A stretch of 64,000 nt of DNA from Anthoceros angustus (taxonomy: Eukaryota; Plantae; Anthocerotophyta), in contig VJWM01000272.1 in the NCBI GenBank assembly GCA_010909165.1, positions 1-64,000 of the forward strand, in the 5' to 3' direction. How positions within the stretch are numbered: position 1 is the stretch's first letter; every line of letters starts with the position of its first letter. Below, one piece after another: positions 17,701-41,870 of the stretch. The position numbers and the translations under genes were made by a program. The notes beneath the pieces are model-generated. The model was given only the letters and a program-made list of their open reading frames with translations, made no database searches and was not told the DNA's origin.

Positions 17701-18617
17701 AGTCTTTCTTCTTGCTGGATGTCCTTGTTCCGCACATGTAGTTTTTGTAGCATTACACAAGGCTGTTTTCTTGTTAACTCGAGGTACTTATTGCGGGATC
17801 AAAATCTAGCGGAGAAAAGATGTTGAAACTTCTTCTTGTTTGTCTATAACCCGTTCAAATTTGGTGGTAATCTTCATGAAAGAGCCTATTGTTGGGAGTA
17901 CTTATCCTAACCATGGTGTAGAAGGAGGAAAACGAAGAGGTTTGGCAATGATTGTGAGTATGGAAGAGGACAGACTGGAGGAGCTATAGCAGGCGACTTG
18001 AAGCTCTTTTGAGACTTTGGCATTTGATACTATATTAGTGGGAGTTCCGAGAGTGTGAAAGCACGATTTAGGGCTGAAACTCTACCTAGCTAAGGACGAT
18101 TGCTTTCATGTTGCATCAATGCTCATGGGGGATTGAAGAAGATGGCGACATTATCATAAGTGGAGCACGGCGGAGAAGCTATATATTGATGATGACATCT
18201 TGAAGCCCATCTCGAATCCACGTGGTTGAGAGACAAGCCCAAGGTGTTTTGATCAATGCTTGTCGAGCCGTAGCCTTATCACAAGCGAGAAGGCTAAGGA
18301 CTCTAAAGTTGAGAGTAGCCAAATTATGAGCAAGAGAGCCGGAGAAGTCCGATTCCCGATTCGTGAAGGATTGTCTCATCTTCTTCTCGACAAGTCATGG
18401 ACAATCCTTAGAGATGTTGAGAAAGGCACATACTTTATCACGCTTTGATGAAAGCCATCATTGGTCTCAAGAAGGGATGATGTGTAGATTTTAACATCGA
18501 TTGCCGAGGTCACGGAGAGAGAAGTCAAGCTCCCAAGTGAAGTAGGAAGCCGCTAGAAGAGATCCCGTGTCAGTTGTACTCCACACTCACAAAAAGCTTT
18601 GCTGGTCTTTACCGTAA
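6376..18617 (+). CDS. TORNADO1-like LRR-Roc-COR gene copy A with downstream caspase-like domain (frameshifted as written, internal duplications)
   Basis: Starts MADPSLPAG (start tentative). Four LRR super-modules to 11726, divergent LRR module, KSCRLVLCGFPYAG|KTT, VWDLAGHREFHALHDFVFP, YWLKFIASNSR and LQCDDQDCTFLTPGFFPRLQV, which match TRN1 Roc-COR motifs as recalled. Confidence 0.88.
11557..14390 (+). repeat. ~1.42-kb tandem duplication (module end, intron, linker, divergent LRR module)
   Basis: 11557-12975 is repeated at 12976-14390. The junction runs through the shared ggattgga. Confidence 0.9.
14820..16975 (+). CDS. Roc GTPase + COR domains, copy A
   Basis: P-loop split by intron 14867-15026, PRTLG, WDLAG, TFGDK. 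COR with an intron after FPRLQ, then IDILARSTQGY and VTLVEGVLRHEC. Confidence 0.9.
16555..18020 (+). repeat. ~0.74-kb tandem duplication spanning COR end and caspase-like start
   Basis: tggcccgatctactcaaggc occurs at ~16565 and ~17303, and the downstream sequence is repeated through tttggcatttgatac. Confidence 0.85.
17930..18617 (+). CDS. Caspase-like (peptidase C14) domain, copy A
   Basis: KRRGLAMI, CINAHG (His codon 18124), DKPKVF-LINACR (Cys codon 18261), DCLIFFST and STLT-K-LCWSLP* (TAA 18615-18617). Several indels must be assumed. Confidence 0.8.
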
Positions 18618-20935: not shown

Positions 20936-23900
20936 ATGTGTCGTTTAAATGTGACATCTTGGAATGCCATGGTCTTGGGGTACCACCAGATGAGTTGTGG
21001 TGTGGAGGCTGCTGCTGTTGTGGTCAATGATGCAAGACAAGGGTCAAGGGTGCAAGACCTGGGTCAAGGATTCAAGAGAAGGGTCAAGTCCCGAATGGGA
21101 CAACATGTGCTGGTGAGAGCCACCGACGCCGGCCGATGTCAGTCACAACAAAACTTGGATGTGATTTGTAGGAAGGAAACACGCTTGTGGATGCGTATGC
21201 AAAATGTGGGGACCTCAGGAATGAGTCAAATGCTTGAAGACTTGCCTCTCAAAAGTAATGTGGTTCCGGGGCACACCATGATCTTGGGGTACACCTCCCA
21301 GATCCACAAGGCTGAACAGGAAGCTCTGCTCCTGTACTCACAGATGCAGCAGGAAGGTGTGGTCCCGAATTACCGCACATATGCTGTTGTCCTTAAAGCT
21401 TGCCGTAGCCTGGCAGCATGGGGTGGGCGAAATGGTGGGCATGCACTTGGATCAAGTGTGAGAGAGCAATGCCTGCGAACTGTGAAAGCTGTCCATTCCG
21501 ATGTTGTGAAGGGTAAGTGCAAGTCGGACGTGTTTGTGGCCAACATGCTTGTGGATGCATACTCAAAGTGTGGAAGTGTAGAAGATGCTAGACACGTGTT
21601 TGATAACATGCCTGTCCGTAGTGTGGTTTCTTGGACTGCCATGATTTTGGGGTACGCCCATATGCACAAGGGTGAGGAGGCTTTGAAGTTGTACATGGAG
21701 ATGCGACGAGCAGGTGTTGTTCCCAACGAGAGAACATATGTGGGTGCGCTTAAGGCCTGCAGTACCATGGCAGAGTTGGGAGCTGATGGCGTATCTCCCA
21801 AACGCCAGTTTCTGGAACCTCTTGTGAGAGCCATCCACCAAGATGTCAAGAAGGCGAGGTTGGAGCCAAATGTGTTTGTGGGGAACATGCTGGTGGATGC
21901 TTATGCAAAATGCAGGAGCCTGGAGACTGCCAGGCAGGTGTTTGAGGACATGTCTTACCGCAATGTAGTGGTATGGAATACGATGATCTTTGGTTACTCC
22001 CAGCAAGCGGGGAAGGGTGAAGAAGCTGCTGCTGTTGTGGTCAATGATGCAAGACAAGGGTCAAGGGTGCAAGACCTGGGTCAAGGATTCAAGAGAAGGG
22101 TCAAGTCCCGAATGGGACAACATGTGCTGGTGAGAGCCACCGACGCCGGCCGATGTCAGTCACAACAAAACTTGGATGTGATTTGTAGGAAGGAAACACG
22201 CTTGTGGATGCGTATGCAAAATGTGGGGACCTCCAGGAATGAGTCAAATGCTTGAAGACTTGCCTCTCAAAAGTAATGTGGTTCCGGGGCACACCATGAT
22301 CTTGGGGTACACCTCCCAGATCCACAAGGCTGAACAGGAAGCTCTGCTCCTGTACTCACAGATGCAGCAGGAAGGTGTGGTCCCGAATTACCGCACATAT
22401 GCTGTTGTCCTTAAAGCTTGCCGTAGCCTGGCAGCATGGGGTGGGCGAAATGGTGGGCATGCACTTGGATCAAGTGTGAGAGCAATGCCTGCGAACTGTG
22501 AAAGCTGTCCATTCCGATGTTGTGAAGGGTAAGTGCAAGTCGGACGTGTTTGTGGCCAACATGCTTGTGGATGCATACTCAAAGTGTGGAAGTGTAGAAG
22601 ATGCTAGACACGTGTTTGATAACATGCCTGTCCGTAGTGTGGTTTCTTGGACTGCCATGATTTTGGGGTACGCCCATATGCACAAGGGTGAGGAGGCTTT
22701 GAAGTTGTACATGGAGATGCGACGAGCAGGTGTTGTTCCCAACGAGAGAACATATGTGGGTGCGCTTAAGGCCTGCAGTACCATGGCAGAGTTGGGAGCT
22801 GATGGCGTATCTCCCAAACGCCAGTTTCTGGAACCTCTTGTGAGAGCCATCCACCAAGATGTCAAGAAGGCGAGGTTGGAGCCAAATGTGTTTGTGGGGA
22901 ACATGCTGGTGGATGCTTATGCAAAATGCAGGAGCCTGGAGACTGCCAGGCAGGTGTTTGAGGACATGTCTTACCGCAATGTAGTGGTATGGAATACGAT
23001 GATCTTTGGTTACTCCCAGCAAGCGGGGAAGGGTGAAGAAGCTCTGCTGCTCTACAAACAGATGCAACAAGGTGGTGTGGTAGCTGATTCCCGAACATAT
23101 GTCGGTGCGCTTCAGGCTTGCGGTGCCATTGCAGAACAGGAGAGAAACGAGGGTGACGGAGTTCGTGTCACAAAACAGTGCCTGGAAACCGTGACAACCA
23201 TCCACAGACATGTCTTGAAGAGGAAGTTGGAGTCCGATGTATTTGTAGCAACCATGCTGGTGGACGTGTATGCCAAATGTGGAAGCCTGGAGAAGGCCAG
23301 GAAGTTGTTCGAAAACATGCCTCACCGTGATGCGGTTTCATGGAATGCCATGATCTTGGGATATGCTCAGATGCAGGAGCCTCAAGAGGCCCTGAACCTG
23401 TACGAGTTGATGAGACAGGAATCCGTGGTTCCTGACGACCGCACTTATGTTGCTGTTCTGAAGGCTTGCTGCACCCTTGCCCAACAAGTAGGGGACAGAA
23501 AAATGCATTGCCTGCAGACAGTGGCACGCATCCATGGCGATGTGGGCAAAGGACGGTTTGATTCCAACGTGTTTGTCGCAAACATGCTCGTAAATGCGTA
23601 TGCAAAATGTGGGAACCTGGAGAAGGCCCGGCTGGTGTTTGACAAGATCCCTCATCGTGATGTGGTGGCTTGGACTGCCATGGTTTTAGGGTATGCCCAG
23701 ATGGACAAGGGTGAAGAAGCTTTGCACCTGTACTCGCAGATGCAACAGGAAGGTGTCCTGCCAAACGAGCGCACATTCGTGGCTGCCCTGACAGCCTGCA
23801 GCAGCGTGGCTGGACTGGAGAAGGGAAGCAAATCCACGCTCAGATCCGCGAAGCCGGTGTGGATCTCTGCGCCTCCTCCCATGTGGCCAACAGTCTGATC

Positions 23901-24640
23901 GACATGTATGGCAAGTGCTCCAGCATGGTGGATGCGCGGAAGGTGTTCGACGCCATTGCCACTAACGACATCGTCGCATGGAACGCGTTGCTGTTAGGGT
24001 ACGCGAAGCAAGGGCAGAGCGAGGCTGTGTTCCAATTGTTGGAGAGGATGAAGCAGGAGGAATCCATCCCAACGACATCACCTTCCTCGGCGTGCTCATG
24101 GTATGCAGTCATGTCGGCCTGATGGACACCGGCCAGAAGTTCTTGGATGCCATGAGCAGAGATTACGGCATAGATCCCTCGATCCAGCACCTCAACTGCA
24201 TGGTGGATCTCCTCGGCCGCGCAGGCCGCATCCACCAAGCCATGGCCATGGTCCGCAGCATGCCCTTCCCGGCTGACATGTCCGTGTGGCGGAGCATCCT
24301 CAGCGCCTGCCAGAAGTGGCGAGCCGTGGAGCTCGGAAGGCGGGCCTTCGAATGCGCTGTTCGGCTGGATGCACGAGACGCTGCGCCGTACGTCTTCATG
24401 GCCAACATCTATCTTGCTGCCGGCATGCCGGCCATGGCGGATAAGGTTCAGGCACGGCGTGCGATGGCGCAGGCGTGGAAGGAGCCGGGGCGCAGCTGGT
24501 GGATGGACGGGACCGGAAGGTGCATGTTTTCTGGTGGCGGATGCTGGACATCCCGAGAGCGAGGGCATCTACGCCAAATTAGACGACATTGTTGCCTCTC
24601 TTCGCCGAAACCTGATTTCGTGTAGAAACTTTTCCTTCAG
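20936..24640 (+). CDS. PPR2 copy 1, PLS-class E+ PPR protein (with internal duplication)
   Basis: ORFs 20936-22255, 22498-23898, 23859-24122 and 23978-24625 give P-L-S triplets. These are followed by HLNCMVDLLGRAG, VWRSILSAC, PYVFMANIY, EPGRSWW and E+ HPESEGIYAKL. No DYW domain is seen. Confidence 0.92.
21010..23041 (+). repeat. ~1016-bp tandem duplication inside PPR2 copy 1
   Basis: gctgctgctgttgtggtcaatgatgcaagac occurs at ~21008 and ~22025. The duplication is absent from copy 2 (46166-48885). Confidence 0.92.
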
Positions 24641-24769
24641 TGCTTCTCCGTTCGTGACGAAAGGAGGTCACGGAAGGAGAAGCATCAAACGGCATAGTTT
24701 CTTCCCGCCTCCTTCGAGTTCTTCTTTTCGTCCTCTTTGGCTGTCGGAGCTTTCGTCGAGGTGCTGGCT

Positions 24770-24949
24770 ATGGCGGCGGAGGAAGGAAGGCGCGGCCGGG
24801 GTGCTGCTGGCGGTGCGGGTGAGCGAGCACCTGGAGGAGGCGCTGGAGAGCAGGTACGCGCTGCACCGGCTGTACGCGGTGCCATTGAGGAGGCGGAGCG
24901 GGCGGAGTGGCTTGGCGCCATCGCTCCGGCGGTGCGCGCGGTGGCTGGG
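24770..24949 (+). pseudogene. 5' fragment of glyoxylate/hydroxypyruvate reductase-like (HPR2/HPPR family) gene
   Basis: MAAEEG..PGVLLAVRVSEHLEEALESRYALHRLY..AVRAVAG resembles the HPPR N-terminus (GVLMxxPMSxYLExELxKRFxLxRxW..IRAVVG, recalled). Frameshifted, and it ends at the LRR junction. Confidence 0.6.
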
Positions 24950-27267
24950 ATGGGCTGGACGACGAGATGTTTAAAGACCTGATTCAATCCCTGTCTACCA
25001 ACACCACAGGCTGGAGCACAACTCCATCAAGGGCACCTCATGGGAAAAGCAAGGCAAGGGCGAAGGTTTGGTGAAAGTGTTGAGAGGCATTCCGAGTGCA
25101 GCCGCAGCTGCGTGCGTTGCTCGCAGACTTGGAGTCCGACTCGGCAACGCGGCAGGAACTGCCATCTGTGGATTTGTGGGGAAGCTACCTTAATTGCGAT
25201 TGCCAGGACGGTGAATGTCAACACCGCGAGGAGTGGCACTGGGCGGTGCGCTTGCGCCTGCTCACAGCCATGGGCAGATGCCGTACGCTCAGGAAGATTC
25301 AACTCAATCCTCTGTGGAAGAGGGTCACAGCGTGAGGCAGGACGAGTCGGTCGCGCTGCTCTCAGGCTTGCAACACAACCTTGTGCTGGAGGAGCTGAAT
25401 CTGTTTGGCTACAAGGGTTTTGGGACGGCAGCAGCCTGCCTGGAGGCACTGAGTGCCGTCATCCACAGAACTCACCGCTAATTGGCCTTCCTCGGTCTGC
25501 AATCTGTGGGATTGACTCCAAAAGGCCTGGGTGCCATCGCTGCAGCCCTTGGACGCAATGTCAGCTCTTCAGTGCTGTCCAGATTGTCTCTGTGTGGGAA
25601 CGACATCAGGAATGCTGTCGGGGCGCAACACTTGGCCGACATCCTTACCACGTCGCCCAAGCTGCGCAATGTCTGGATGAGCAACATTGGCATGGACGAG
25701 GAAGGAGCCGTGGTGATTGCGCAGGCCCTGGCGCATACCACTACACTGGCTGGGCTTAGAATCGGAGATCCTGCGCCCCGGAATCCAAACCGGCCGCGCC
25801 CATGTTCCTCGTTCCATTGCTCCAAGCTTTGGTGTGGCACACCCTGGCGGATCCTCCAACTGCTGTTTCTGGCAATCACTCCATCACACGGCTTGTCCTT
25901 GAGTGTCCGGGAGGCCAGGAGGCTGTGGAGCCGGGGTTGGGAGAAGCCCTGGCTCAGGTGCTTCGCACCAACCGGGCTCTGAAAGACCTCACACTATCCA
26001 GCTTCTTCGTCACACGCGGATTGGGAGCTCTGCGGGAAAACAGCAGCATCACCAAACTCCTGGTGTTCCACTCGCGGCAGTCGGAGGATGATGACATGGA
26101 TCCCAACCTGACCGCCATCCTGGATGAGTGCAAGACTGTTGAGGAGGTGCAGATCCGGTTTGACAAGCCGTTTGGTCCGTCCAGCTTCACCAAGGCGTTT
26201 TTCCAAGGGTTGCTTCAGAAAAACCGCAACATCAACAGGCTGGTGTTGGATGGCTGGGATGGGCTGGACGACGAGATGTTTGAAGACCTGATTCAATCCC
26301 TGTCTACCAACACCAACACCCACCTCAGGCTGGATCACATCTCCATCAAGGGCACCTCATGGGAAAAGCAAGGCAGGGGCGAACGTCTGGAGAAAGCGTT
26401 GGGAGCTGCGCGAGTGCAGCCGCAGCTGCGTGCGTTGCTCGCAGACTTGGAGTCCGAGTCGCCAGTGCTGCAAGAACTCCCATCTGTGGATTTGTGGGAA
26501 GCTATTTCGATTGCCTTTGCCAGGAGGCCTACAGGAGTGTGAACACCGGGGCAGTGGCAGTGGTACGTACGCCTGCGCCTGCTCACAGCTATCGGCAAAT
26601 GCCGGTCGCTGAGGAAGATTCATCTGAATCCTCCGGGAGGATGGGCACTTACAGCGTGAGGGAGGTAGAGGCGCTGGCGCTGCTATCTGGCTTGCAACAC
26701 AACCTTGTGCTGGAGGAGCTTAATTTGCTTGGCTACGTGGGCTTTGGGACGGGACCCTGCCTGCAGGCATTGACTGGCGTCATGGAGATGCTATTTCTCA
26801 TTGGACTTGCTGGGTCTGCAATATCTGGGATTGAGTGCAGAAGAACTGGGTGTCATCGCTGCAGCCCTTGGACGCAACCGCAGCTCAGTGCTGTCCAGAT
26901 TGTCTCTTTGTGGGAACGATATCGGGAATGATGTCGGGGCGCAACATTTGGCCGACATCCTGAGGAATTCGATCGCCCTCCGCAGTCTCTGGATGAGCAA
27001 TATTGGCATGGACGAGGAAGGAGCCGTGCTGATTGCAGAGGCCCTGACGAGTACCACCACCCTGATCCGTCTCAGAATCGGAGACCCTGCGCCCCGGAAT
27101 CCGAAGCAGCCGGCGCCCATGTTCATTGGTCCAATTCTCGAAGCTTAGGTATGGCACACGCCGGATTTGGAGAATCCCCAGGAGGCCAGCAGGCCGTGGA
27201 GCCGGGACTGGGAGAAGCCCTGGCTCGGGTGCTGCGCACCAACCGTGCTCTCACTGACCTCAGACTT
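24950..27267 (+). CDS. TRN1-like LRR fragment copy B (module tail + ~2 modules, truncated)
   Basis: Module anchors at 25093 and 26411. ORFs 25482-25982, 25802-26542 and 26801-27148. Confidence 0.88.
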
Positions 27268-28920: not shown

Positions 28921-30715
28921 GCCATTGCTTCTGGGAAGCTACGTGCATCCACGACTTGCTCCAAAGACAGCTCACCTTGGGAGCATCACGTGGCAGAGGA
29001 ATATACCTGTTCTACAAAGCAGTCTTAGTGAGATGAAAGAGCATCGCTTGACGGGGTCAAGAGGAACGTGCCTCATGTTCTGAAGTTCTGGAGAGCATCA
29101 GACAGTGTACGGATTGGGGCTGGACATCTCGCTTCCTTTCACGGAAGAGCCATCTTCATGGACGAAAGAGAGAGTGCAGCGCTCCTGAGGCTGACAGCCA
29201 CTCACAAGGCATCCGACAAAGCACAGAAAAATGTCGTCCGAAACCACTGGTGTCAGGAATGCCTTGTCGTGCAAAGTCCACAGTGTAGACAGGTTGGGAA
29301 CAAGTAGCTAGAGGCGCCTTTGCAGGCGTGCAGAAGTTGCTCCACTGCATGCTTCTCCGCGCCGCTGGCCAGCACTGGCCAGCAGAAGTGGATTCGAATC
29401 TCCCAATCACACTTGCACGCTTTTCGTTGCAACTTGCAAGAGCCCACATTGATCCATATAAGATAATTGGGATGAGCAGGAAGTGGAGTGGGACGCCGTT
29501 TGCTCTGCTTGCCTTTTCTTGCAAGTCCTCCTGAGAAGGTGGGACGTTGTTGTGGAGGTTGGGCTATGGCTGATCCATCTCTTCCTGCCGGCGCCGCTGG
29601 TGGACCTGCTCGAGATCCTCGAGTCCCGCTCGCCGCAGCTGCGTGCGTTGCTTGCAGAGCTGGAGTCCGACTCGCCAAAGCGGCAGGAACTGCCATCTGT
29701 TGATTCGTGGGAAGCTACTTCAATTGCGACTGCCAGGACGGGGAATGTCACCACCGCGAGGAGTGGCACTGGGCGGTGCGCTTGCGTCTGCTCACCGCTA
29801 TCGGCAGATGCCCGCAGGTGTGACTGCCATTGCTTCTGGGAAGCTACGTGCATCCACGACTTGCTCCAAAGACAGCTCACCTTGGGAGCATCACGTGGCA
29901 GAGGAATATACCTGTTCTACAAAGCAGTCTTAGTGAGATGAAAGAGCATCGCTTGACGGGTCAAGAGGAACGTGCCTCATGTTCTGAAGTTCTGGAGAGC
30001 ATCAGACAGTGTACGGATTGGGGCTGGACATCTCGCTTCCTTTCACGGAAGAGCCATCTTCATGGACGAAAGAGAGAGAGTGCAGCGCTCCTGAGGCTGA
30101 CAGCCACTCACAAGGCATCCGACAAAGCACAGAAAAATGTCGTCCGAAACCACTGGTGTCAGGAATGCCTTGTCGTGCAAGTCCACAGTGTAGACAGGTT
30201 GGGAACAAGTAGCTAGAGGCGCCTTTGCAGGCGTGCAGAAGTTGCTCCACTGCATGCTTCTCCGCGCCGCTGGCCAGCACTGGCCAGCAGAAGTGGATTC
30301 GAATCTCCCAATCACACTTGCACGCTTTTCGTTGCAACTTGCAAGAGCCCATTGATCCATATAAGATAATTGGGATGAGCAGGAAGTGGAGTGGGACGCC
30401 GTTTGCTCTGCTTGCCTTTTCTTGCAAGTCCTCCTGAGAAGGTGGGACGTTGTTGTGGAGGTTGGGCTATGGCTGATCCATCTCTTCCTGCCGGCGCCGC
30501 TGGTGGACCTGCTCGAGATCCTCGAGTCCCGCTCGCCGCAGCTGCGTGCGTTGCTTGCAGAGCTGGAGTCCGACTCGCCAAAGCGGCAGGAACTGCCATC
30601 TGTTGATTCGTGGGAAGCTACTTCAATTGCGACTGCCAGGACGGGGAATGTCACCACCGCGAGGAGTGGCACTGGGCGGTGCGCTTGCGTCTGCTCACCG
30701 CTATCGGCAGATGCC
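28907..30715 (+). repeat. ~0.9-kb tandem duplication (PPR1 end, spacer, start of ROCO gene)
   Basis: The ROCO start at 29566 breaks off at ~29810 (cggcagatgcc|cgcagg) and restarts from the PPR1 3' end. The shared sequence is gatgcc. Confidence 0.9.
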
Positions 30716-33700
30716 GTACGCTCAGGAAGATTCAACTGAATCCTCTGTGGAAGAGGGTCACAGCGTGAGGCGGGACGAGGCGTTGGCGCTCTTTTCAGGC
30801 TTGCAACACAACCTTGTGCTGGAGGAGCTGAATCTGTTTGGCTACAAGGGGTTTGGGACGGCAGCGTGCCTCCAGGCACTGAGTGCTGTCATCGACAGAA
30901 CTCATCGCTCACTGGACTTCCTCGGTCTGCAATCTGTGGGATTGAGTGCAGAAGGACTGGGTGCCATCGCTGCAGCCCTTGGACGCAATGTCAGCTCTTC
31001 AGTGCTGTCCAGATTGTCTCTGTGTGGGAACGACATCAGGAATGCTGTCGGGGCGCAACACTTGGCCGACATCCTTACCAAGTCGCCCAAGCTGCGCAAT
31101 CTCTGGATGAGCACCATAGGCATGGACGAGGAAGGAGCCGTGGTGATTGCGCAGGCCCTGGCGCATACCACTACACTGGCTGGGCTTAGAATCGGAGATC
31201 CTGCGCCCCGGAATCCAAACCGGCCCGCGCCCATGTTCCTCGTTCCATTGCTCCAAGCTTTGGTGTGGCACACCCTGGCGGATCCTCCAGCTGCTGTTTC
31301 TGGCAATCACTCCATCACACGGCTTGTCCTTGAGTGTCCGGGAGGCCAGGAGGCTGTGGAGCCAGGGCTGGGAGAAGCCCTGGCTCAGGTGCTGCACCAA
31401 CCGGGCGCTGAAAGACCTCAGACTATCCAGCTTCTTCGTCACACGCGGATTGGGAGCTCTGCGGAAAACAGCAGCATCACCAAACTCCTGGTGTTCCACT
31501 CGCGGCAGTCGGAGGATGATGACATGGATCCCATCCTGACCACCATCCTGGATGAGTGCAAGACTGTTGAGGAGGTTCAGATCCGGTTTGACAAGCCCTT
31601 TGGTCCGTCCAGCTTCACCAAGGCGTTTTTCAAGGGTTGCTGCAGAAAACCGCAGCATCAACAGGCTGGTGTTGGATGGCTGGGATGGGCTGGACGACGA
31701 GATGTTTGAAGACCTGATTCAATCCCTGTCTACCAACACCCACCTCAGGCTGGATCACATCTCCATCAAGGGCACCTCATGGGAAAAGCAAGGCAGGGGC
31801 GAACGTCTGGAGAAAGCGTTGGGAGCTGCGCGAGTGCAGCCGCAGCTGCGTGCGTTGCTCGCAGACTTGGAGTCCGAGTCGCCAGTGCTGCAGGAACTCC
31901 CATCTGTGGATTTGTGGGGAAGCTATTTCGATTGCCTTTGCCAGGAGGCCTACCGGGAGTGTCAACACCGGGGGCAGTGGCAGTGGTACGTACGCCTGCG
32001 CCTGCTCACAGCTATCGGCAAATGCCGGTCGCTGAGGAAGATTCATCTGAATCCTCCGGGGAGGATGGGAACTTACAGCGTGAGGGAGGTAGAGGCGCTG
32101 GCTCTGCTATCAGGCTTGCAACACAACCTTGTGCTGGAGGAGCTGAATCTGTTTGGCTACAAGGGGTTTGGGAGGGCACCCTGCCTGCAGGCATTGACTG
32201 GCGTCATAGAGAGATGTTGTTTCTCATTGGACTTGCTGGGTCTGCAACATCTGGGATTGAGTGCAGAAGAACTGGGTGTCATCGCTGCAGCCCTTGGACG
32301 CAACCGCAGCTCAGTGCTGTGCAGATTGTCTCTTTGTGGGAACGACATCAGGAATGCTGTCGGGGCGCAACACTTGGCCGACATCCTTACCAAGTCGCCC
32401 AAGCTCCGCAATCTATGGATGAGCAACATAGGCATGGACGAGGAAGGAGCCGTGGTGATTGCACAGGCCCTGGCGCATACCACTACACTGGCTGGGCTTA
32501 GAATCGGAGATCCTGCGCCCCGGAATCCAAACCAGCCCGCGCCCATGTTCCTCGTTCCATTGCTCCAAGCTTTGGTGTGGCACACCCTGGCGGATCCTCC
32601 AGCTGCTGTTTCTGGCAATCACTCCATCACACGGCTTGTCCTCGAGTGTCCGGGAGGCCAGGAGGCTGTGGAGCCGGGGCTGGGAGAAGCCCTGGCTCAG
32701 GTGCTTCGCACCAACCGGGCTCTGAAAGACCTCACACTATCCAGCTTCTTCGTCACACGCGGATTGGGAGCTCTGCGGGAAAACAGCAGCATCACCAAAC
32801 TCCTGGTGTTCCACTCGCGGCAGTCGGAGGATGATGACATGGATCCCAACCTGACCGCCATCCTGGATGAGTGCAAGACTGTTGAGGAGGTGCAGATCCG
32901 GTTTGACAAGCCCTTTGGTCCGTCCAGCTTCACCAAGGCGTTTTTCAAGGGTTGCTGCAGAAAACCGCAGCATCAACAGGCTGGTGTTGGATGGCTGGGA
33001 TGGGCTGGACGACGAGATGTTTGAAGACCTGATTCAATCCCTGTCTACCAACACCAACACCCACCTCAGGCTGGATCACATCTCCATCAAGGGCACCTCA
33101 TGGGAAAAGCAAGGCAGGGGCGAACGTCTGGAGAAAGCGTTGGGAGCTGCGCGAGTGCAGCCAGCTGCGTGCGTTGCTCGCAGACTTGGAGTCCGAGTCG
33201 CCAGTGCTGCAAGAACTCCCATCTGTGGATTTGTGGGAAGCTATTTCGATTGCCTTTGCCAGGAGGCCTACAGGAGTGTCAACACCGGGGCAGTGGCAGT
33301 GGTACGTACGCCTGCTCACAGCTATCGGCAAATGCCGGTCGCTGAGGAAGATTCATCTGAATCCTCCGGGAGGAGGGCACTTACAGCGTGAGGGAGGTAG
33401 AGGCGCTGGCTCTGCTATCAGGCTTGCAACACAACCTTGTGCTGGAGGAGCTGGATCTGTATGGCTACAAGGGGTTTGGGACGGCAGCAGCTGCCTGCAG
33501 GCACTGAGTGCTGTCATCGACAGAACTCATCGCTCACTGGACTTGCTGGGTCTGCAATCTGGGATTGAGTGCAGAAGGACTGGGTGCCATCGCTGCAGCC
33601 CTTGGACGCAATGTCAGCTCTTCAGTGCTGTCCAGATTGTCTCTTTGTGGGAACGACATCAGGAATGCTGTCGGGGCGCAACACTTGGCCGACATCCTTA

Positions 33701-36700
33701 CCAAGTCGCCCAAGCTCCGCAATCTCTGGATGAGCAACATAGGCATGGACGAGGAAGGAGCCGTGGTGATTGCACAGGCCCTGGCGCATACCACTACACT
33801 GGCTGGGCTTAGAATCGGAGATCCTGCGCCCCGGAATCCAAACCAGCCCGCGCCCATGTTCCTCGTTCCATTGCTCCAAGCTTTGGTGTGGCACACCTGG
33901 CGGATCCTCCAGCTGCTGTTTCTGGCAATCACTCCATCACACGGCTTGTCCTTGAGTGTCCGGGAGGCCAGGAGGCTGTGGAGCCAGGGCTGGGAGAAGC
34001 CCTGGCTCAGGTGCTGCACCAACCGGGCTCTGAAAGACCTCAGACTATCCAGCTTCTTCGTCACACGCGGATTGGGAGCTCTGCGGAAAACAGCAGCATC
34101 ACCAAACTCCTGGTGTTTCACTCGCGGCAGTCGGAGGATGATGACATGGATCCCATCCTGACCACCATCCTGGATGAGTGCAAGACTGTTGAGCAGGTGC
34201 AGATCCGGTTTGACAAGCCCTTTGGTCCGTCCAGCTTCACCAAGGCGTTTTTCCAAGGGTTGCAGAAAACCGCAGCATCAACAGGCTGGTGTTGGATGGC
34301 TGGGATGGCTGGACGACGAGATGTTTGAAGACCTGATTCAATCCCTGTCCACCAACACCAACACCCTCAGGCTGGATCACATCTCCATCAAGGGCACCTC
34401 ATGGGAAAAGCAAGGCAGGGGCGAACGTCTGGAGAAAGCGTTGGGAGCTGCGCGAGTGCAGCCGCAGCTGCGTGCGTTGCTCGCAGACTTGGAGTCCGAG
34501 TCGCCAGTGCTGCAAGAACTCCCATCTGTGGATTTGTGGGAAGCTATTTCGATTGCCTTTGCCAGGAGGCCTACAGGAGTGTGAACACCGGGGCAGTGGC
34601 AGTGGTACGTACGCCTGCGCCTGCTCACAGCTATCGGCAAATGCCGGTCGCTGAGGAAGATTCATCTGAATCCTCCGGGGAGGAGGGCACTTACAGCGTG
34701 AGGGAGGTAGAGGCGCTGGCTCTGCTATCAGGCTTGCAACACAACCTTGTGCTGGAGGAGCTGGATCTGTATGGCTACAAGGGGTTTGGGACGGCAGCAG
34801 CTGCCTGCAGGCACTGAGTGCTGTCATCGACAGAACTCATCGCTCACTGGACTTCCTCGGTCTGCAATCTGTGGGATTGAGTGCAGAAGGACTGGGTGCC
34901 ATCGCTGCAGCCCTTGGACGCAATGCAGCTCAGTGCTGTCCAGATTGTCTCTGTGTGGAACGACATCAGGAATGCTGTCGGGCGCAACACTTGGCCGACA
35001 TCCTTACCAAGTCGCCCAAGCTCCGCAATCTATGGATGAGCAACATAGGCATGGACGAGGAAGGAGCCGTGGTGATTGCACAGGCCCTGGCGCATACCAC
35101 TACACTGGCTGGGCTTAGAATCGGAGATCCTGCGCCCCGGAATCCAAACCAGCCCGCGCCCATGTTCCTCGTTCCATTGCTCCAAGCTTTGGTGTGGCAC
35201 ACCCTGGCGGATCCTCCAGCTGCTGTTTCTGGCAATCACTCCATCACACGGCTTGTCCTTGAGTGTCCGGGAGGCCAGGAGGCTGTGGAGCCAGGGCTGG
35301 GAGAAGCCCTGGCTCAGGTGCTTCGCACCAACCGGGCTCTGAAAGACCTCACACTATCCAGCTTCTTCGTCACACGCGGATTGGGAGCTCTGCGGAAAAC
35401 AGCAGCATCACCAAACTCCTGGTGTTCACTCGCGGCAGTCGGAGGATGATGACATGGATCCCAACCTGACCGCCATCCTGGATGAGTGCAAGACTGTTGA
35501 GGAGGTGCAGATCCGGTTTGACAAGCCCTTTGGTCCGTCCAGCTTCACCAAGGCGTTTTTCAAGGGTTGCTGCAGAAAACCGCAGCATCAACAGGCTGGT
35601 GTTGGATGGCTGGGATGGGCTGGACGACGAGATGTTTGAAGACCTGATTCAATCCTGTCCACCAACACCAACACCCACCTCAGGCTGGATCACATCTCCA
35701 TCAAGGGCACCTCATGGGAAAAGCAAGGCAGGGGCGAACGTCTGGAGAAAGCGTTGGGAGCTGCGAGTGCAGCCGCAGCTGCGTGCGTTGCTCGCAGACT
35801 TGGAGTCCGAGTCGCCAGTGCTGCAAGAACTCCCATCTGTGGATTTGTGGGAAGCTATTTCGATTGCCTTTGCCAGGAGGCCTACAGGAGTGTCAACACC
35901 GGGGCAGTGGCAGTGGTACGTACGCCTGCGCCTGCTCACAGCTATCGGCAAATGCCGGTCGCTGAGGAAGATTCATCTGAATCCTCCGGGAGGAGGGCAC
36001 TTACAGCGTGAGGGAGGTAGAGGCGCTGGCGCTGCTATCAGGCTTGCAACACAACCTTGTGCTGGAGGAGCTGAATCTGTTGGCTACGTGGGTTGGGACG
36101 GCACCCTGCCTGCAGGCATTGACTGGCGTCATGGAGAGATGCTATTTCTCATTGGACTTGCTGGGTCTGCAACATCTGGGATTGAGTGCAGAAGGACTGG
36201 GTGTCATCGCTGCAGCCCTTGGACGCAACCGCAGCTCAGTGCTGTCCAGATTGTCTCTTTGTGGGAACGACATCGGAATGCTGTCGGGCGCAACATTTGG
36301 CCGACATCCTGAGGAATTCGATCGCCCTCCGCAATCTCTGGATGAGCAATATTGGCATGGACGAGGAAGGAGCCGTGCTGATTGCAGAGGCCCTGGCGAA
36401 TACCACCACCCTGATCCGTCTCAGAATCGGAGACCCTGCGCCCCGGAATCCGAAGCAGCCGGCGCCCATGTTCATTGGTCCAATTCTCGAAGCTTTGGTG
36501 TGGCACACGCCGGATTCGGAGAATCAGGAGGATTGTCATCCTCCTGCTTCTAGAGCCACTTCCAATCGCTCCATCAGGCTGCTTGTTCTTGAGTGCCCAG
36601 GAGGCCAGCAGGCCGTGGAGCCAGGACTGGGAGAAGCCCTGGCTCAGGTGCTGCGCACCAACCGTGCTCTCACTGACCTCAGACTTGCCAGCTTCTTCGT

Positions 36701-37119
36701 CACACGCGGATTGGAAGCGCTACCTGAAAACAGCAGCATCACCCAACTCCAAGTAAGTCACACGCGGAATTCGGAGGATGATGACATGGATCCTATGCTG
36801 ATCACGATTCTTCAGGAGTGCAAGAATGTCCAGCAGCTGCAGCTTCAGTTTTATAAGCCCTTTGGTCCATCCAACTTCTCCAAGGCGTTTTTCCAAGGGT
36901 TGCGGGATAATCGTAGCATCAAGACGCTTGTGTTGGATGACTGCGAAGGATTGGATGACTACATGTTCCAGAACTTGATGCGGTCTCTGGGACGCAACTG
37001 CAACAACGTCCTGGAGAACATTTCCATCAAGAAAACAACCTGGGAAAGCGAAGGCAAAGGAATATACATCCAGAATGCTCTCTCAAGGAACATGCGCAGA
37101 AGAAGCGCTGCTCCGCAGG
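30469..37119 (+). repeat. Tandem array of five ~1.31-kb LRR super-modules (copy C)
   Basis: Anchors at 31831, 33152, 34453 and 35764 (spacings 1321, 1301, 1311). Confidence 0.95.
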
Positions 37120-40100
37120 GTAGGTGCCCAAGCCAGTAGCTAGCTACCCTTGTCCTGATTTGTATCTACAGTCAGAACCCACAAACTCAGATGTATACTG
37201 ACCCCTTCTCACTTGTGCAGGTTCGGAAGAAGTGCCACCACCGGTCACGGCAACTGTGGCAACCTCTGATGCCGCAGCAGGTAATGAAACTACATGAATC
37301 CATGGATTTGATCCAACCACTTCCAAGCTGTTGTTGTTGTTGCAACTAGTTTGAATGCCTGTACCGAATGCACCACTTGATGCTGCTGCTGGCAGGCAGT
37401 CTGATGATTGACTGATTGGCTGTTTTGTTTTCACCACAATTTCCAGTTGCTGTTCCTGAGGAGCTCAGTGCCCTGCTTGCCGAGCTCGACTCACCTTCGC
37501 CCACACTCAGTAGTCTTCCTCGTGTGAAGCGTTTGGGCACTTGTTCAAGAGGGACGTGGAACATCCACAGGTGGAACTTGAACTGCGCATGCGCCTTATG
37601 AAGGCTATCGGAAATGCCCCACACTCAGATTCATAGATCTCGACCCTCTTGGGCGTCGAAATTACAGGGTGACGGTGGCAGAGGCGATGGCGCTGCTGGA
37701 AGGCCTGAGCTCGAATGCAATAGTGGAACGGCTGGACTTGAGTGGCTTCCTTGGTTTTGGAACAGGTGAAGTCTGCGCTGCAATCGCCGCTATCTTGCAA
37801 TCCAGCCGCACCTTGCAATTTCTGAATATGGGATACACTGGCATGACTGTCGAAGGACTGGCTTGCATTGCCCTGTACTGCGACATAATCGCAGCACTGT
37901 GCTTCGCACCTTGTATCTTTCTGGAAACACGACTGTGGGAGAAGGTGTTGGAGCTCAACACCTGGCTGATATCCTGACCAGCACTCCCGCTCTTCGCAAC
38001 CTGGGGATGTGGGATACAGGGATGGATGAGGCGGGAGCATTGATGATAGGGGATGCTCTGGCTCAGAACACCACACTTGACTGGCTGAACATAGGATTCA
38101 ATCAAGCGTGGAGGCCAAAGCAGGCAGGGATGATGGCCACGCTGTTAGCTCGAGCATTCACCCTGGCATGCTGGACGCAGACCAGGAGGCTGAAGGTGTT
38201 GCTCCCAAGCTTCCTTCTGTTAACGAGTCTGTCACACATCTCCAGCTGGAAGTATGGGGAGCAGGACAGCAGCCTGTCATCGCTGAGTTGGGAGAAGCTG
38301 TGGCCCGCATGCTGCGGTCGAACATGACTTTAAGGCATCTCGATGTATGTACCTGCTTTATAAGGCAGGGATTGGAGGGGCTGTGTGACAACAGCAGCGT
38401 TATCCGTGTGACAGTCCGACATGGTAGCTCTTGTGCTAAGGAGGACTACTGCAAGCTGATGCCAATCCTGCAGAGTTGCCAGACAGTGGAAAAGTTTACA
38501 ATTAGTTCAGGACGGTTTGGGACCTTTGGGATCATCCGACTTCCTCAAGACGATTTTCGAATGGTTGCAGGACAATCCTCGCCTCAACAAGTTGGTGTTG
38601 GATGGCTGGAAAGGGTTGGACGACCATATGTTCCAAGACCTGTTGCGGGCTCTGCAAGTGAACACCAATTTGGAGAAAATATCGTTCGAGAACACTGTGT
38701 GGAAAAGTCAGGGAAAAGGAGCTGCAGTGGATGAGGTACTACGGCAAAACAGGGAATACCGAAAAGCTCTGGCAGGGGCTCCAACAATGCCAGTGAAATC
38801 ATGTCGCCTCGTACTTTGTGGATTTCCATATGCAGGTGAGCCACGTGCTGAACCCAAAGTTTGTACATCCCCAAATGGCGTAGTTGTGGCAGACTTCACT
38901 GCAGTTGTTTCTGTCTTCTACATCTGTTTTCTTGTCTTAACGTTGTTTTCGTCTCCGGAGTGTAATCGGTGGTAAATGTTGCTGTTTCAGGAAAACCACG
39001 ATACGGAATACGTTGATGAGTACGCAAACACACGAAAACGATGTGGAGATCGAGGGTGAAACGATTTCGAAACGTATACCTCGAACTCTTGGGTTTGAGG
39101 TTGAGGTGATAAAAGATGGTCCATCCTTGAGAATAACCGTTTGGGATCTTGCAGGGCACAGGGAGTTTCATGCTCTTCACGATGTGGTCTTTCCTGCTGT
39201 GAATAGCTCCTCTCTCTTCTTGTTTGTCTATAACCCGTTCAAACTTGGTGGTAATTATTCAAGTGCGGGAATGAAGGAGAGAAAGGATTTCCGAGATGAA
39301 TTTATTTATTGGCTTAAATTTATTGCTTCCAACTCGCGGTTAGCTCAACAGGTGAAACCTTATGTTCATGTGGTGGTAACATTTGGTGACAAGCTTGAAG
39401 GTAGGATGTCTTGAAGGTTGCACGGAGGAAGTGTTGGTGATGAAGAAAAGTTCATGGCTGTTGTGGAAACATCCAATGAACCCACTTTCATCAATGGACA
39501 GAGTTGGAAAGATGTGTATGCACTACGCAGCCTCATAGAGGAAAAGCTACAACTTGTCAGCAAATTGGCCCCAATTCCCAATATTTGTGAGCAGACCCGT
39601 ATACATGTGCAAAGATGGGCTGAGGATCAACAAGGTATGCCAATCATTTCTGTTGAGAAGTTTAGTGAGTTGTTTCATAGCACATGTAAGGCGGCAATAG
39701 GGCATCCACTCATCTCGAGGATTACAAGATTTCTTAGAGACTTCATGGACAAAGAGGATAGCTGGAAAGTAGTAGCATCATATCTCAAGGATTCGGGAGA
39801 TCATATATTTCCAAATGTCACAGCTTATGGTCATCAACCTCCGATGGTTAGGAATGGGCGTTTTGGTCAGCTGATTAGTATATTTGGTGAACGGACAATA
39901 GGCAAGATTGGCTTCAAGTTCAAAATGGGTTTATCAGCAAATATGGGTTGAGTAGCCTTCTAAAATGTCTTTGAACAAGGTAGGGCTTGATGAAACCATT
40001 GTGAGCGAGGAACAATTCATCCAATTGATGCTTGAGTTGCACCTTTGCCACGAAAGCAGAGATGAGGAAGGAGAAGTGCGTTATTTTGTTCCAATATGTA

Positions 40101-41870
40101 CGTATAAAGAAGATGTATCGAGTTGATCAGTTAGTATGGCCTTCACGGTGGTAATCTTCATGATTATATCTTTATGGGTTTGCGTCTACAATGTGATGAT
40201 CAAGATTGTACATTCCTCACACCAGGATTTTTCCCTAGGTTACAGGTTTGTAACTTTTCTCAAGTTGGCTATCTTTTGTTTTATGTCCTGAAACTTCTTC
40301 TTTTGTTTTATGTCCTTGAAACTTCTTCTTTTGTTTTATTATTATTATTGATTGTTAACTAGTCTCATTGTTCCTATATATTGTAGGTACTTTTATACAC
40401 ATATTGTTTGTCAAAAGGCTGGGTTGATGAGGAAAGACCAATTGATTCAGGAATAAAATTGGAGTCTAATGTCCTTTTAATATCTGCAGAGGCACTAGAT
40501 ATCTTTGTGGAATTTAATGCTGAATTGGGTTGCTACATAGATATACTGGCCCGATCTACTCAAGGCTATTTAGAGTCCATGTCATTTTTGAAGGAACATA
40601 TTGTATCTCAGATTCGGGCATTTTGTGCTTCATATGAGGGTTGTGCAGGGGTCACACTGGTTGAAGGTGTTCTTCGACATGAATGTGGCATCCCTCACTC
40701 TATGCGACATAGGAGACACGAGTGTATCGACGATAAGCTAGTCAAAGCGGTGGCTGCTGCAAAGGACCGATGCTATGCTCACTACACGCATCTTGGAGGC
40801 TCTTGATGGCGGCAGAGCTCGACACTCATTTTAAAGGCCAACATAGAGTATGCAACGTGGTGGATGGTCATGTCATTTTGGGACAAAAGAGGACCTTGCA
40901 AGCGAGTTCCAAGGTTGAAGCTCTCAATCGTGAATAGTCTTTCTTCTTTTGTTTTATGTCCTTGTTCACATGTAGTTTTTAGCATTACACAAGCGGTGCT
41001 TTCTTGCAAACTCGATGTACTGCAGGATCAAAATCTAGCAGGAGAAAAGATGCTGAAACTTCTAGACACCTATCCCTGCAAGTAGTGCAAGCTGTGCTGA
41101 AAGAAGAGCCTATTGTTGGGAGTATTTATCCTAACCATGGTGTAGAAGGAGGAAAACGAAGAGGTTTGGCAATGATTCTGAGTATGGAAGAGGACAGACC
41201 TGGAGGAGCTGTAGACAGAGGGCGACTTGAAGCTCTTTTTGAGACTTTGGCATTTGATACTGATATATTATTGGACGGTTCTGAGAGTGTGAAAGCACGA
41301 TTTAGGAGCGTTGCCAAACTCCTACCTAGCTAAGGACGATTGCTTTCATGTTGCATCAATGCTCATGGGGGATTGAAGAAGATGGCGGCATACATTATCA
41401 TAAGTGGAGCACGGCGGAGAAGCTATATGTTGATGATGACATCTTGAAGCCCATCTGAATCCACGTGGTTGAGACAAGCCCAAGGTGTTTTGATCAATGC
41501 TTGTCGAGCCGTAGCCTTATCACAAGCGAAAGCTAAGGACTCTGAAGTTGAGAGTAGCCAAATGGTGAGCAAGAGAGCCGGAGAAGTCCGATTCACGCAT
41601 GAAGGATTGTCTCATCTTCTTCTCGACGTCATGGACAACAATCCTTTAGAGATGTTGAGAAAGGCACAAACTTTATCACAGCTTTGATGAAAGCCATCAT
41701 TCGGGGTCTCAAGAAGGGATGATGTGTGCATTTTAACATCGGTGATTGCCGAGGTCACGGAGATAGAAGTCAAGCTCCCAAGTGAAGCAGGAAGGCGCCC
41801 TGAGAAGAGATCCCAGTGTCCAGAGTTGTACTCCACACTCACCAAAAAACTTTGCTGGTCTTTACCATAA
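30469..41870 (+). CDS. TORNADO1-like LRR-Roc-COR gene copy C with downstream caspase-like domain (most complete copy; frameshifted as written)
   Basis: Five super-modules to 37119, intron/linker/intron, divergent LRR module to 38835, P-loop intron 38836-38990, Roc-COR to ~40929, candidate intron 40930-41025, caspase-like domain to TAA 41868-41870. Confidence 0.9.
41154..41870 (+). CDS. Caspase-like (peptidase C14) domain, copy C
   Basis: KRRGLAMILSMEEDRPGGAVDRGRLEALFETLAFD in one frame (ORF 41004-41333). CINAHG has its His at 41364 and NACR its Cys at 41502. 41718-41870 reads DDVCILTSVIAEVTEIEVKLPSEAGRRPEKRSQCPELYSTLTKKLCWSLP*. Confidence 0.85.

What the first reader, a model, noticed from the sequence alone, without database searches (positions are those of the whole stretch)
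41154..41870. Animal-type caspase-like protease domain encoded in a plant locus
Seen: three copies (17930-18617, 41154-41870, 54374-54957) give, in order, KRRGLAMI..EEDRPGGAVD..LEALFETLAFD, DDCF-CCINAHG, DKPKVFLINACRA, KDCLIFFSTNHGQQSFRDVEKGTNFITVL and ILTSVIAEV..SQCPELYSTLTKKLCW*. Known (recalled): caspase-8 has DCFICCILSHG, GKPKVFFIQACQG, VSYRN..EGTWYIQSL and ILTEVN..KQMP..TLRKKL. The p20 and p10 motifs appear in the same order, with the His/Cys dyad. Plant metacaspases instead use D-S/A-C-H/Y-S-G, and true caspases are generally considered absent from plants. Caveat: the His region needs two 1-nt homopolymer corrections.
Basis: partly seen in the sequence, partly recalled or inferred. Interest (0 to 1): 0.95.

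Follow-up and report, generated by a model that had tools for sequence, protein, structure and literature searches.

The report
Broken caspase-type domains in a plant
Three decayed copies of a protease domain of the animal caspase type sit at the tail of broken LRR-Roc-COR receptor genes in a land-plant (probably hornwort) genome. These copies are dead, but intact expressed relatives exist in the same plant, and mosses carry the same domain on their NLR immune receptors, although plants are usually said to lack caspases.

Summary
The quoted motifs are real, and the homology to caspases is significant. One uninterrupted 97-aa piece of copy 3 passes Pfam Peptidase_C14 (E 1e-10) and hits only caspases among the PDB rows shown.

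No copy is an open gene.
- Copy 2 (41151-41870) needs 11 frame corrections, not two.
- Copy 1 needs 22 and has two stop codons.
- Copy 3 needs 19, has one stop codon and is cut off.
- At least two lesions around the His motif are shared by all three copies.
- Contigs of an independent DNA-labelled run carry copy 2's deleted states.
- RNA contigs of the same sample mostly carry the missing bases. Intact paralogs therefore appear to be expressed elsewhere in the genome.

The locus is plant DNA (PLS-class PPR genes with E/E+ motifs lie in each unit). The domain ends a decayed LRR-Roc-COR gene.

Read through, the domain falls in a plant clade, split 100/100 from animal caspases. That clade also holds a hornwort COR-caspase transcript and moss caspase-NB-ARC-LRR proteins (Ceratodon purpureus KC19_5G008800 and KC19_5G008700). 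It keeps the His/Cys dyad and the Arg/Asn(for Gln)/Arg S1 pocket, and its members fold like caspase-7, -8 and -6.

I found no paper that describes this. The scan has noted the same fusion elsewhere in this genome.

The parts
41151..41870 (+). Caspase-type domain, copy 2 (best preserved): p20 start, His motif, Cys motif NACRA, p10, stop at 41868-41870. It is broken by 11 small deletions, at about 41320, 41324, 41348, 41366, 41453, 41470, 41491, 41599, 41627, 41702 and 41710.
   Evidence: Frames. Read-through test. Lesion table. Read contigs. The read-through scores 197 bits against the plant-family profile.
17927..18617 (+). Caspase-type domain, copy 1: 22 frame-breaking indels, 8 in-frame 3-nt deletions and 2 in-frame stop codons (18485, 18554).
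   Evidence: Alignment. Lesion table. tblastn with family proteins.
54371..54960 (+). Caspase-type domain, copy 3: holds the longest open piece (54662-54952, Cys motif to start of p10). It has 19 frame-breaking indels and one stop, and similarity ends at about 54960, so the C-terminal third is lost.
17196..17303 (+). Fragment holding only the start of the caspase-type domain, left by a partial tandem duplication of the COR-end/caspase-start segment in unit 1.
   Evidence: Motif search and self-BLAST. Two COR-end matches in unit 1.
40385..40803 (+). Last COR exon of unit 2. Its end aligns with the start of hornwort transcript P0041, which continues into the caspase domain. It is followed by an in-frame stop and a frame-shifted linker (40804-41150).
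   Evidence: tblastn with P0041: 40579-40686 at 50% identity, then 41127 onward. Translation.
40244..40384 (+). Intron (about 141 nt, GT..AG allowing for the +2 offset of the cut). It is skipped only in contigs of the RNA-labelled run, and removing it joins the two COR exons in frame.
   Evidence: Joint 40243>40385, X2 depth 560, none in X1. In-frame junction ..FFPRLQ|VLLYTYCL...
38941..40243 (+). Roc GTPase-like piece (38941-39411) and COR region (39415-40243) of unit 2, interrupted by stops and frameshifts.
   Evidence: Pfam Roc E 2.1e-5, 25.1 bits, below the cut-off of 27. LRRK2 Roc domain E 0.007. COR-A E 3.4e-5 on the unit-1 equivalent 15668-16375, below cut-off. The COR piece itself found nothing in PDB.
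30469..37136 (+). Array of about five 1.31-kb ribonuclease-inhibitor-type LRR super-modules, the sensor part of the unit-2 gene. Similar arrays lie at about 6440-11600, 25100-27200 and 49140-51850.
   Evidence: Repeat families with 1306-1320 nt spacing. RNI-like LRR matches, best E 2.9e-8. Weak LRR_6 match.
20936..24974 (+). PLS-class PPR gene pieces with E and E+ motifs. The same is found at 46166-48885 and 4651-5559. This context shows that the locus is land-plant nuclear DNA.
   Evidence: Pfam PPR_2 E 4.9e-73, E_motif E 2.9e-6, Eplus_motif.

Best explanation
The window is a segmentally duplicated array of units that recur at spacings from about 6 to 24 kb. There are two fuller units and two shorter ones, in a land-plant genome that is probably a hornwort.

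Each fuller unit holds PLS-type PPR gene pieces and one large gene on the + strand. That gene runs: 1.3-kb RNI-type LRR super-modules, a Roc GTPase, COR, a linker, and a C-terminal caspase-type (MEROPS C14A-like) protease domain.

The caspase-type domains here are pseudogene remnants. They carry shared and private frameshifts, stop codons, a truncation and a partial duplicate.

They descend from a real plant family of caspase-type domains. That family keeps the His/Cys dyad and a basic S1 pocket (Arg, Asn in place of caspase Gln, Arg). It predicts cleavage after acidic residues.

Inferred, not shown: in intact paralogs the LRRs sense a ligand, the Roc-COR switch drives dimerisation or oligomerisation, and the caspase domains are activated by induced proximity to cut substrates. 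That would be a one-protein analogue of an inflammasome or apoptosome, for immunity or cell death.

The copies in this window do nothing as proteases.
For: Homology:
- Pfam Peptidase_C14 E 1.1e-10 on an unedited 97-aa piece.
- All 60 PDB rows shown are caspases.
- ESM Atlas features point to Peptidase_C14, score 0.93.
- In a search of 1.84 billion representatives, the named hits I checked were mostly animal caspases, with two chitin-binding proteins among them. The other checked hits were a hornwort transcript and unnamed caspase-domain proteins that proved to be this plant family.

Family:
- The read-through of copy 2 matches the plant family at 32-36% identity over about 250 aa, E down to 7e-39. 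The best animal caspase is at E 5e-17.
- It scores 197 bits against the family profile.
- The tree splits 15 plant rows from 17 animal rows at 100/100.
- The family profile matches caspase-6, -7, -8 and -3 over their full length, E 5.9e-35.
- The AlphaFold model of member P0008 has pLDDT 81 and pTM 0.83. The top 50 Foldseek hits are all caspases, the best at E 1.1e-20.
- The dyad and S1-pocket columns are kept.

Architecture:
- Hornwort transcript P0041 is collinear with the window's COR end and caspase domain.
- Roc, COR and LRR pieces were detected.

Decay:
- Lesion counts per copy.
- At least two lesions around the His motif (after 41324 and 41348 in copy 2) are shared by all three copies.
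- At all ten listed lesion sites of copy 2, contigs of the DNA-labelled run X1 mostly or wholly carry the deleted state, for example 0 of 447 depth with the extra G at 41366.
- Contigs of the RNA-labelled run X2 mostly carry the extra bases.
- Adding those ten insertions, plus one T that copy 3 has, opens one frame from 41094 to the stop.

Plant origin: PPR with E/E+ motifs in the same units.
Against: - Indels are nearly as many as substitutions (22-30 against 25-37) and are mostly short deletions. That pattern looks like unpolished long-read assembly error.
- The platforms of runs X1 and X2, and their DNA/RNA labels, are guesses.
- The Roc and COR matches are below Pfam cut-offs.
- No outgroup (metacaspase, bacterial C14) could be brought into the tree, so the plant clade's position relative to animal caspases is unrooted.
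- Protease activity, specificity and any immune role are inferred from residues and architecture only.
- The last Gly of the Cys motif is Ala in all three copies, whereas it is invariant in the moss family.
Confidence: 0.8

Rival explanations
1. The genes are intact in the organism. The frameshifts are indel errors of a long-read assembly that short reads could not polish in this multi-copy region.
For: The indel-to-substitution ratio is near 1:1 with a strong deletion bias, and many lesions are 1-nt losses in short runs. RNA-run contigs carry the missing bases at ten of copy 2's eleven sites. Other agents met 'frameshift-riddled' genes elsewhere in this genome.
Against: Contigs built independently from another run (X1, depths of tens to hundreds) carry the deleted state at all ten listed sites, exclusively so at six. 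The lesion after 41348 is not in a homopolymer and is shared by all three copies. Copies 1 and 3 also have substitution stop codons, copy 3 is truncated, and unit 1 has a partial duplicate. The RNA contigs also differ by many substitutions, which fits paralogs.
Confidence: 0.13
2. The caspase-like sequence is animal DNA: contamination of the assembly, or a very recent transfer from an animal.
For: The nearest named proteins in public databases are animal caspases.
Against: It sits three times on one contig between plant PLS-PPR genes and is fused to the same Roc-COR gene. It is at most about 31% identical to the animal caspases compared. It belongs to a clade with hornwort and moss sequences, split 100/100 from animals by a branch of 1.39. 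The gene has a plant-side relative that is expressed (P0041).
Confidence: 0.03
3. It is a divergent plant metacaspase, or another non-caspase C14/clan-CD protease, that only mimics caspase motifs.
For: Pfam PF00656 covers caspases and metacaspases alike, so the Pfam hit alone does not discriminate.
Against: The S1-pocket columns are basic (Arg/Asn/Arg), as in caspases. The 60 best profile matches and 50 best fold matches in PDB are all caspases, over both p20 and p10.
Confidence: 0.03

Closest known systems
Animal caspases (MEROPS C14A; caspase-6, -7, -8, -3, -4)
   Same: Same p20-p10 fold order. Catalytic His in xHG and Cys in xACRx. Both S1 arginines kept. GT/S-x-F-[IV] p10 motif and TL-x-KKL C-terminus. 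Full-length profile matches at E 6e-35 and fold matches at TM 0.7-0.8 for intact family members.
   Different: Only 25-31% identity. The plant sequences form a separate clade on a long branch. Asn replaces the pocket Gln. There is no CARD or DED prodomain; the domain is instead fused to Roc-COR (C-terminally) or NB-ARC (N-terminally). The copies in this window are pseudogenes.
Moss caspase-NB-ARC-LRR proteins (Ceratodon purpureus KC19_5G008800 and KC19_5G008700; unnamed relatives on contigs L001-L003)
   Same: Closest intact relatives of the window's domain: 32-36% identity, the same motifs, the same clade.
   Different: There the domain is the N-terminal exon of an NLR. Here it is the C-terminal end of an LRR-Roc-COR gene. 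The last Gly of the Cys motif is kept there and is Ala here.
Hornwort transcript TRINITY_DN2499 of Nothoceros aenigmaticus (P0041, P0006, P0042)
   Same: Same COR-end-plus-caspase layout in one open reading frame, collinear with the window.
   Different: Only 33-50% identical in the aligned blocks. It has a long acidic insert in the p20 region. It is a partial transcript, so the upstream LRR-Roc part is not seen.
ROCO proteins (LRRK2, DAPK1, plant TORNADO1, bacterial Roco)
   Same: LRR, then Roc GTPase, then COR, with an output domain after COR.
   Different: The output is a caspase-type protease rather than a kinase or no domain. The Roc and COR matches here are weak and the gene is broken.
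Plant metacaspases (C14B)
   Same: Same clan CD and the same Pfam family PF00656.
   Different: They have a different Cys motif and an acidic S1 pocket with Arg/Lys specificity (established knowledge). No metacaspase appeared among the best profile or fold matches shown.

Membership tests
Caspases proper (MEROPS C14A) | Significant sequence match to the caspase domain over both p20 and p10 | tested here: met
   Unedited 97-aa piece: PF00656 E 1.1e-10, and the PDB rows shown are all caspases. Intact family profile: caspase-6 E 5.9e-35 over profile positions 14-263 of 282. The whole domain of the window could be tested only as a read-through.
Caspases proper (MEROPS C14A) | Catalytic His (xHG) and Cys (QACxG-type) in order | tested here: met
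   INAHG and INACRA align with SHG and QACRG of animal caspases. In the window they are separated by out-of-frame stretches.
Caspases proper (MEROPS C14A) | Basic S1 pocket (Arg-Gln-Arg; caspase-1 Arg179, Gln283, Arg341) giving Asp specificity | tested here: inconclusive
   Both Arg columns are kept, but Gln is Asn throughout the plant clade. Specificity was not measured.
Caspases proper (MEROPS C14A) | Caspase fold, closest to solved caspases | tested here: met
   Tested on family member P0008, not on the window's broken copy: pLDDT 81; top 50 Foldseek PDB hits all caspases, E down to 1.1e-20.
Caspases proper (MEROPS C14A) | Phylogenetic position inside or sister to C14A rather than C14B or bacterial C14 | tested here: inconclusive
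   The plant clade is cleanly split from animal caspases (100/100), but no metacaspase or bacterial outgroup could be obtained. A motif scan of 185,579 prokaryotic genomes found no relative.
Caspases proper (MEROPS C14A) | An open reading frame that can make the enzyme | tested here: not met
   11, 22 and 19 frame-breaking indels in copies 2, 1 and 3, plus stops and a truncation. The deleted states are seen in independent contigs.
Metacaspases (C14B) | D-[SA]-C-[HY]-S-G Cys motif and an acidic S1 pocket | tested here: not met
   The motif is NACR[A/G] and the pocket columns are Arg/Asn/Arg.
ROCO proteins | Roc GTPase directly followed by COR, usually after LRRs | tested here: inconclusive
   Roc 25.1 bits (cut-off 27) and COR-A 24.2 bits (cut-off 35.3), in the right order after RNI-type LRRs. 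The pieces are frame-shifted.

The most novel reading that the evidence does not exclude
Bryophytes keep a functional clade of true caspase-type (C14A-like, acid-specific) proteases that has been wired directly into two kinds of intracellular receptor: C-terminally onto LRR-Roc-COR proteins in hornworts and N-terminally onto NB-ARC-LRR immune receptors in mosses. Some land plants would then run a receptor-fused, caspase-driven death or immune pathway comparable to inflammasomes. The textbook statement that plants have only metacaspases would be wrong for non-seed plants. This window would be a decayed part of the hornwort gene family.
Probability: 0.5. Interest if true: 0.9.

Novelty: new variant of a known kind. 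Interest (0 to 1): 0.6.

Why it matters
Plant cell-death research has looked for decades for the enzymes behind 'caspase-like' activities, on the premise that plants lack caspases. A plant clade with caspase-type catalytic residues and S1 arginines, fused to receptor modules, would make that question testable in bryophytes: express an intact paralog and measure its P1 specificity.

This window adds three things. The family sits in plant DNA next to PPR genes. It belongs to a Roco-type gene. It turns over by duplication and decay.

The window is not the place to study function, because its copies are dead.

Tried and rejected
- Pfam on most single in-frame pieces found nothing, because the pieces are too short. 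Only the 97-aa copy-3 piece passes.
- The window's lineage has no close relative (over 50% identity) among 1.84 billion representative proteins. Intact paralogs of this genome could therefore not be fetched.
- A motif-based scan of prokaryotic genomes and a tblastn against plasmids gave no bacterial relatives, so no outgroup was available.
- Applying all RNA-supported insertions at once fails. The one at 41415 breaks the frame and must belong to another paralog. Leaving it out and adding one T that copy 3 has gives one frame.
- Nine full-text literature searches found no description of caspase domains in hornworts or mosses, or on plant NLR or Roco proteins. Two NLR surveys were read and mention none.
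- A search for runs whose library description names Illumina listed none, so the read platform stays unknown.
- No gasdermin-like ORF caught the eye between the units, but no profile search for one was made.
- The PDB search with the COR piece gave nothing meaningful.

Full report
WHAT IS IN THE SEQUENCE

The window is built of repeated units on the + strand. Arrays of 1.31-kb repeats (12-13 copies in several blocks) alternate with unique segments that recur at spacings of about 24, 13 and 6 kb.

Each fuller unit holds:
- PLS-class PPR gene pieces (PPR_2 E 4.9e-73; E and E+ motifs);
- a block of ribonuclease-inhibitor-type LRR super-modules (best PDB match E 2.9e-8);
- a Roc-like GTPase piece (Pfam Roc E 2.1e-5; LRRK2 Roc E 0.007);
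- a COR-like region (COR-A E 3.4e-5 in unit 1);
- the caspase-like stretch.

The E/E+ PPR motifs mark land-plant nuclear DNA. Other notes of this scan call the genome a probable hornwort. I did not test that directly. The closest expressed look-alike of the COR-caspase junction is a hornwort transcript (see below).

THE OBSERVATION

The quoted peptides exist, but they are stitched from different copies and frames.

The best unedited evidence is the 97-aa open piece of copy 3 (54662-54952, from the Cys motif to the start of p10):
- Pfam Peptidase_C14 at 42.1 bits, E 1.1e-10, cut-off 21.4.
- phmmer against PDB gives 112 matches. The 60 shown are all caspases, the best being caspase-4 at E 1.1e-4.
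- ESM Atlas features give Peptidase_C14 clusters at 0.93.
- A full phmmer scan of 1.84 billion representatives gives 24 hits at E<=1e-3. The named hits I checked were mostly animal caspases, with two chitin-binding proteins among them. The other checked hits were a hornwort transcript and unnamed caspase-domain proteins that proved to be a plant family. None was above 42% identity.

The N-terminal piece of copy 2 hits caspase-2 only weakly (E 0.045).

THE COPIES ARE BROKEN

The three copies differ by many indels.

Contigs of two public runs from one sample of the same organism were laid on copy 2.
- Contigs of the RNA-labelled run X2 mostly carry extra bases after 41320, 41324, 41348, 41366, 41453, 41470, 41599, 41627, 41702 and 41710.
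- Contigs of the DNA-labelled run X1 mostly or only carry the window's shorter state: 0 of 95.6 depth at 41348, 0 of 446.9 at 41366, 112 of 486 at 41453.

Adding those ten insertions, plus one T that copy 3 has at the run ending at 41491, turns copy 2 into one open frame from 41094 to the stop at 41868-41870. An eleventh RNA-supported insertion, at 41415, breaks the frame and must come from another paralog.

Measured against this read-through:
- copy 2 has 11 frame-breaking deletions;
- copy 1 has 22 frame-breaking indels and two in-frame stops;
- copy 3 has 19 and one stop, and it loses similarity at about 54960.

Lesions at read-through nucleotides 232, 257 and 276 are shared by all three copies. 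The one at 257 (missing G after 41348, between DDCF and CCINAHG) is not in a homopolymer. Decay therefore began before the units duplicated.

A further fragment (17196-17303) is a partial tandem duplicate. The upstream LRR, Roc, COR and linker parts are also out of frame, and an in-frame stop follows the COR exon at 40804.

CAVEAT: COULD THESE BE ASSEMBLY ERRORS?

Indels are almost as frequent as substitutions and are nearly all deletions. This resembles residual long-read error.

I rate that rival at about 0.13, for four reasons:
- independently built contigs hold the deleted states;
- copies 1 and 3 also have substitution stops;
- copy 3 is truncated;
- a shared lesion lies outside any homopolymer.

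The DNA/RNA labels and the platforms of the runs are guesses.

One joint speaks for X2 being RNA. It skips 40244-40384 (GT..AG with the stated +2 offset) and is seen only in X2. Removing that stretch joins the two COR exons in frame.

WHAT FAMILY IT IS

The representative search led to a set of unnamed proteins, P0008, P0013, P0020 and P0029-P0039 (alignment A2), and to hornwort transcripts P0006 and P0041.
- The read-through of copy 2 matches the A2 family at 32-36% identity over about 250 aa (E down to 7e-39). The best animal caspase is at E 5e-17.
- It scores 197 bits on a profile that it did not help to build.
- In a maximum-likelihood tree, 15 plant rows are split from 17 animal caspase rows at 100/100 by a branch of 1.39. 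The tree is unrooted and the window row is long-branched.
- The A2 profile matches caspase-6, -7, -8 and -3 end to end (E 5.9e-35).
- An AlphaFold model of P0008 (pLDDT 81, pTM 0.83) has caspases as all of its top 50 PDB fold matches, the best being caspase-7 at E 1.1e-20, TM 0.69/0.80.
- Motif columns show the p20 Arg, His in AHG, Cys in NACR[G/A], the p10 Arg in S-F/G-R and the TL-x-KKL tail aligned with animal caspases. The pocket Gln is Asn in every plant sequence.

This is a caspase-type domain, not a metacaspase-type one.

ARCHITECTURES

Hornwort transcript P0041 (412 aa) aligns first with the window's COR end (40579-40686, 50% identity) and then with the caspase domain from 41127 on. 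So COR-caspase is one reading frame in a hornwort.

The A2 proteins are first exons. They end where the ORF runs into a GGTAAG/GGTAAT splice donor. They lie directly upstream of NB-ARC-LRR ORFs on contigs L001-L003.

A search with one of those NB-ARC ORFs found annotated full-length fusions in the moss Ceratodon purpureus: KC19_5G008800 (Peptidase_C14 30-241, NB-ARC 308-549, LRR) and KC19_5G008700, which UniProt names 'Caspase family p20 domain-containing protein'. The caspase part of KC19_5G008800 is 64% identical to A2 member P0032.

The domain therefore occurs in at least two bryophyte lineages, in two receptor contexts.

HOW IT LIKELY WORKS

Shown: homology, conserved catalytic and pocket residues in the family, fusion to receptor-type modules, expression of paralogs, and decay of the copies here.

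Inferred: in intact proteins the LRRs sense, the Roc-COR module (or NB-ARC in mosses) switches and multimerises, and the caspase domains activate by proximity and cut after acidic residues, leading to immunity or cell death.

The window's copies have no protease function.

NOVELTY

Nine full-text searches and two NLR surveys gave no description of this. The moss proteins are nevertheless already in public databases with automatic names.

The scan has noted the same Roco-caspase fusion elsewhere in this genome, and one follow-up reached a similar reading.

I file it as a new variant of a known kind. The interest lies with the family. This particular locus is a dead copy array.

Noticed in passing
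L002:10001-13596 and 14712-19931; L001:139-5957; L003:10001-12501: On moss-like contigs the caspase-type ORF is a first exon ending in a GGTAAG/GGTAAT splice donor, directly upstream of NB-ARC-LRR ORFs. Annotated Ceratodon purpureus proteins KC19_5G008800 and KC19_5G008700 confirm a caspase-NB-ARC-LRR fusion. I found no paper on caspase-NLRs in plants.
   Followed up: partly
window 6440-11600, 25100-27200, 30469-37136, 49140-51850: Arrays of 1.31-kb ribonuclease-inhibitor-type LRR super-modules (about 437 aa per module) with copy number differing between units. Several long ORFs run in more than one frame of this GC-rich DNA, and Pfam sees almost nothing in them.
   Followed up: partly
window 40244-40384: A 141-nt GT..AG intron in the COR region is skipped only in contigs of the RNA-labelled run, and its removal keeps the frame. 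The Roco-caspase genes are therefore not intronless.
   Followed up: yes
window 4651-5559, 20936-24974, 28068-28475, 46166-48885: PLS-class PPR genes with E and E+ motifs are duplicated together with the Roco-caspase units. They are split over several ORFs and frames, so they too may be decayed.
   Followed up: partly
window 60000-64000: There is an abrupt change to 59-63% GC with strongly negative AT skew (-0.27 to -0.38) and negative GC skew. No tandem repeat was found and its nature was not determined.
   Followed up: partly
window 57184-59744: A fourth, partial LRR-Roc-COR unit (93.6% identical to 37726-40311) ends before any caspase part.
   Followed up: partly
window 17860-18640, 41094-41870, 54300-54975: Between copies, indel events are about as many as substitutions and are nearly all deletions. 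Copy 1 also has eight clean 3-nt deletions. This is an unusual spectrum for pseudogene decay and is worth checking against raw reads genome-wide.
   Followed up: partly
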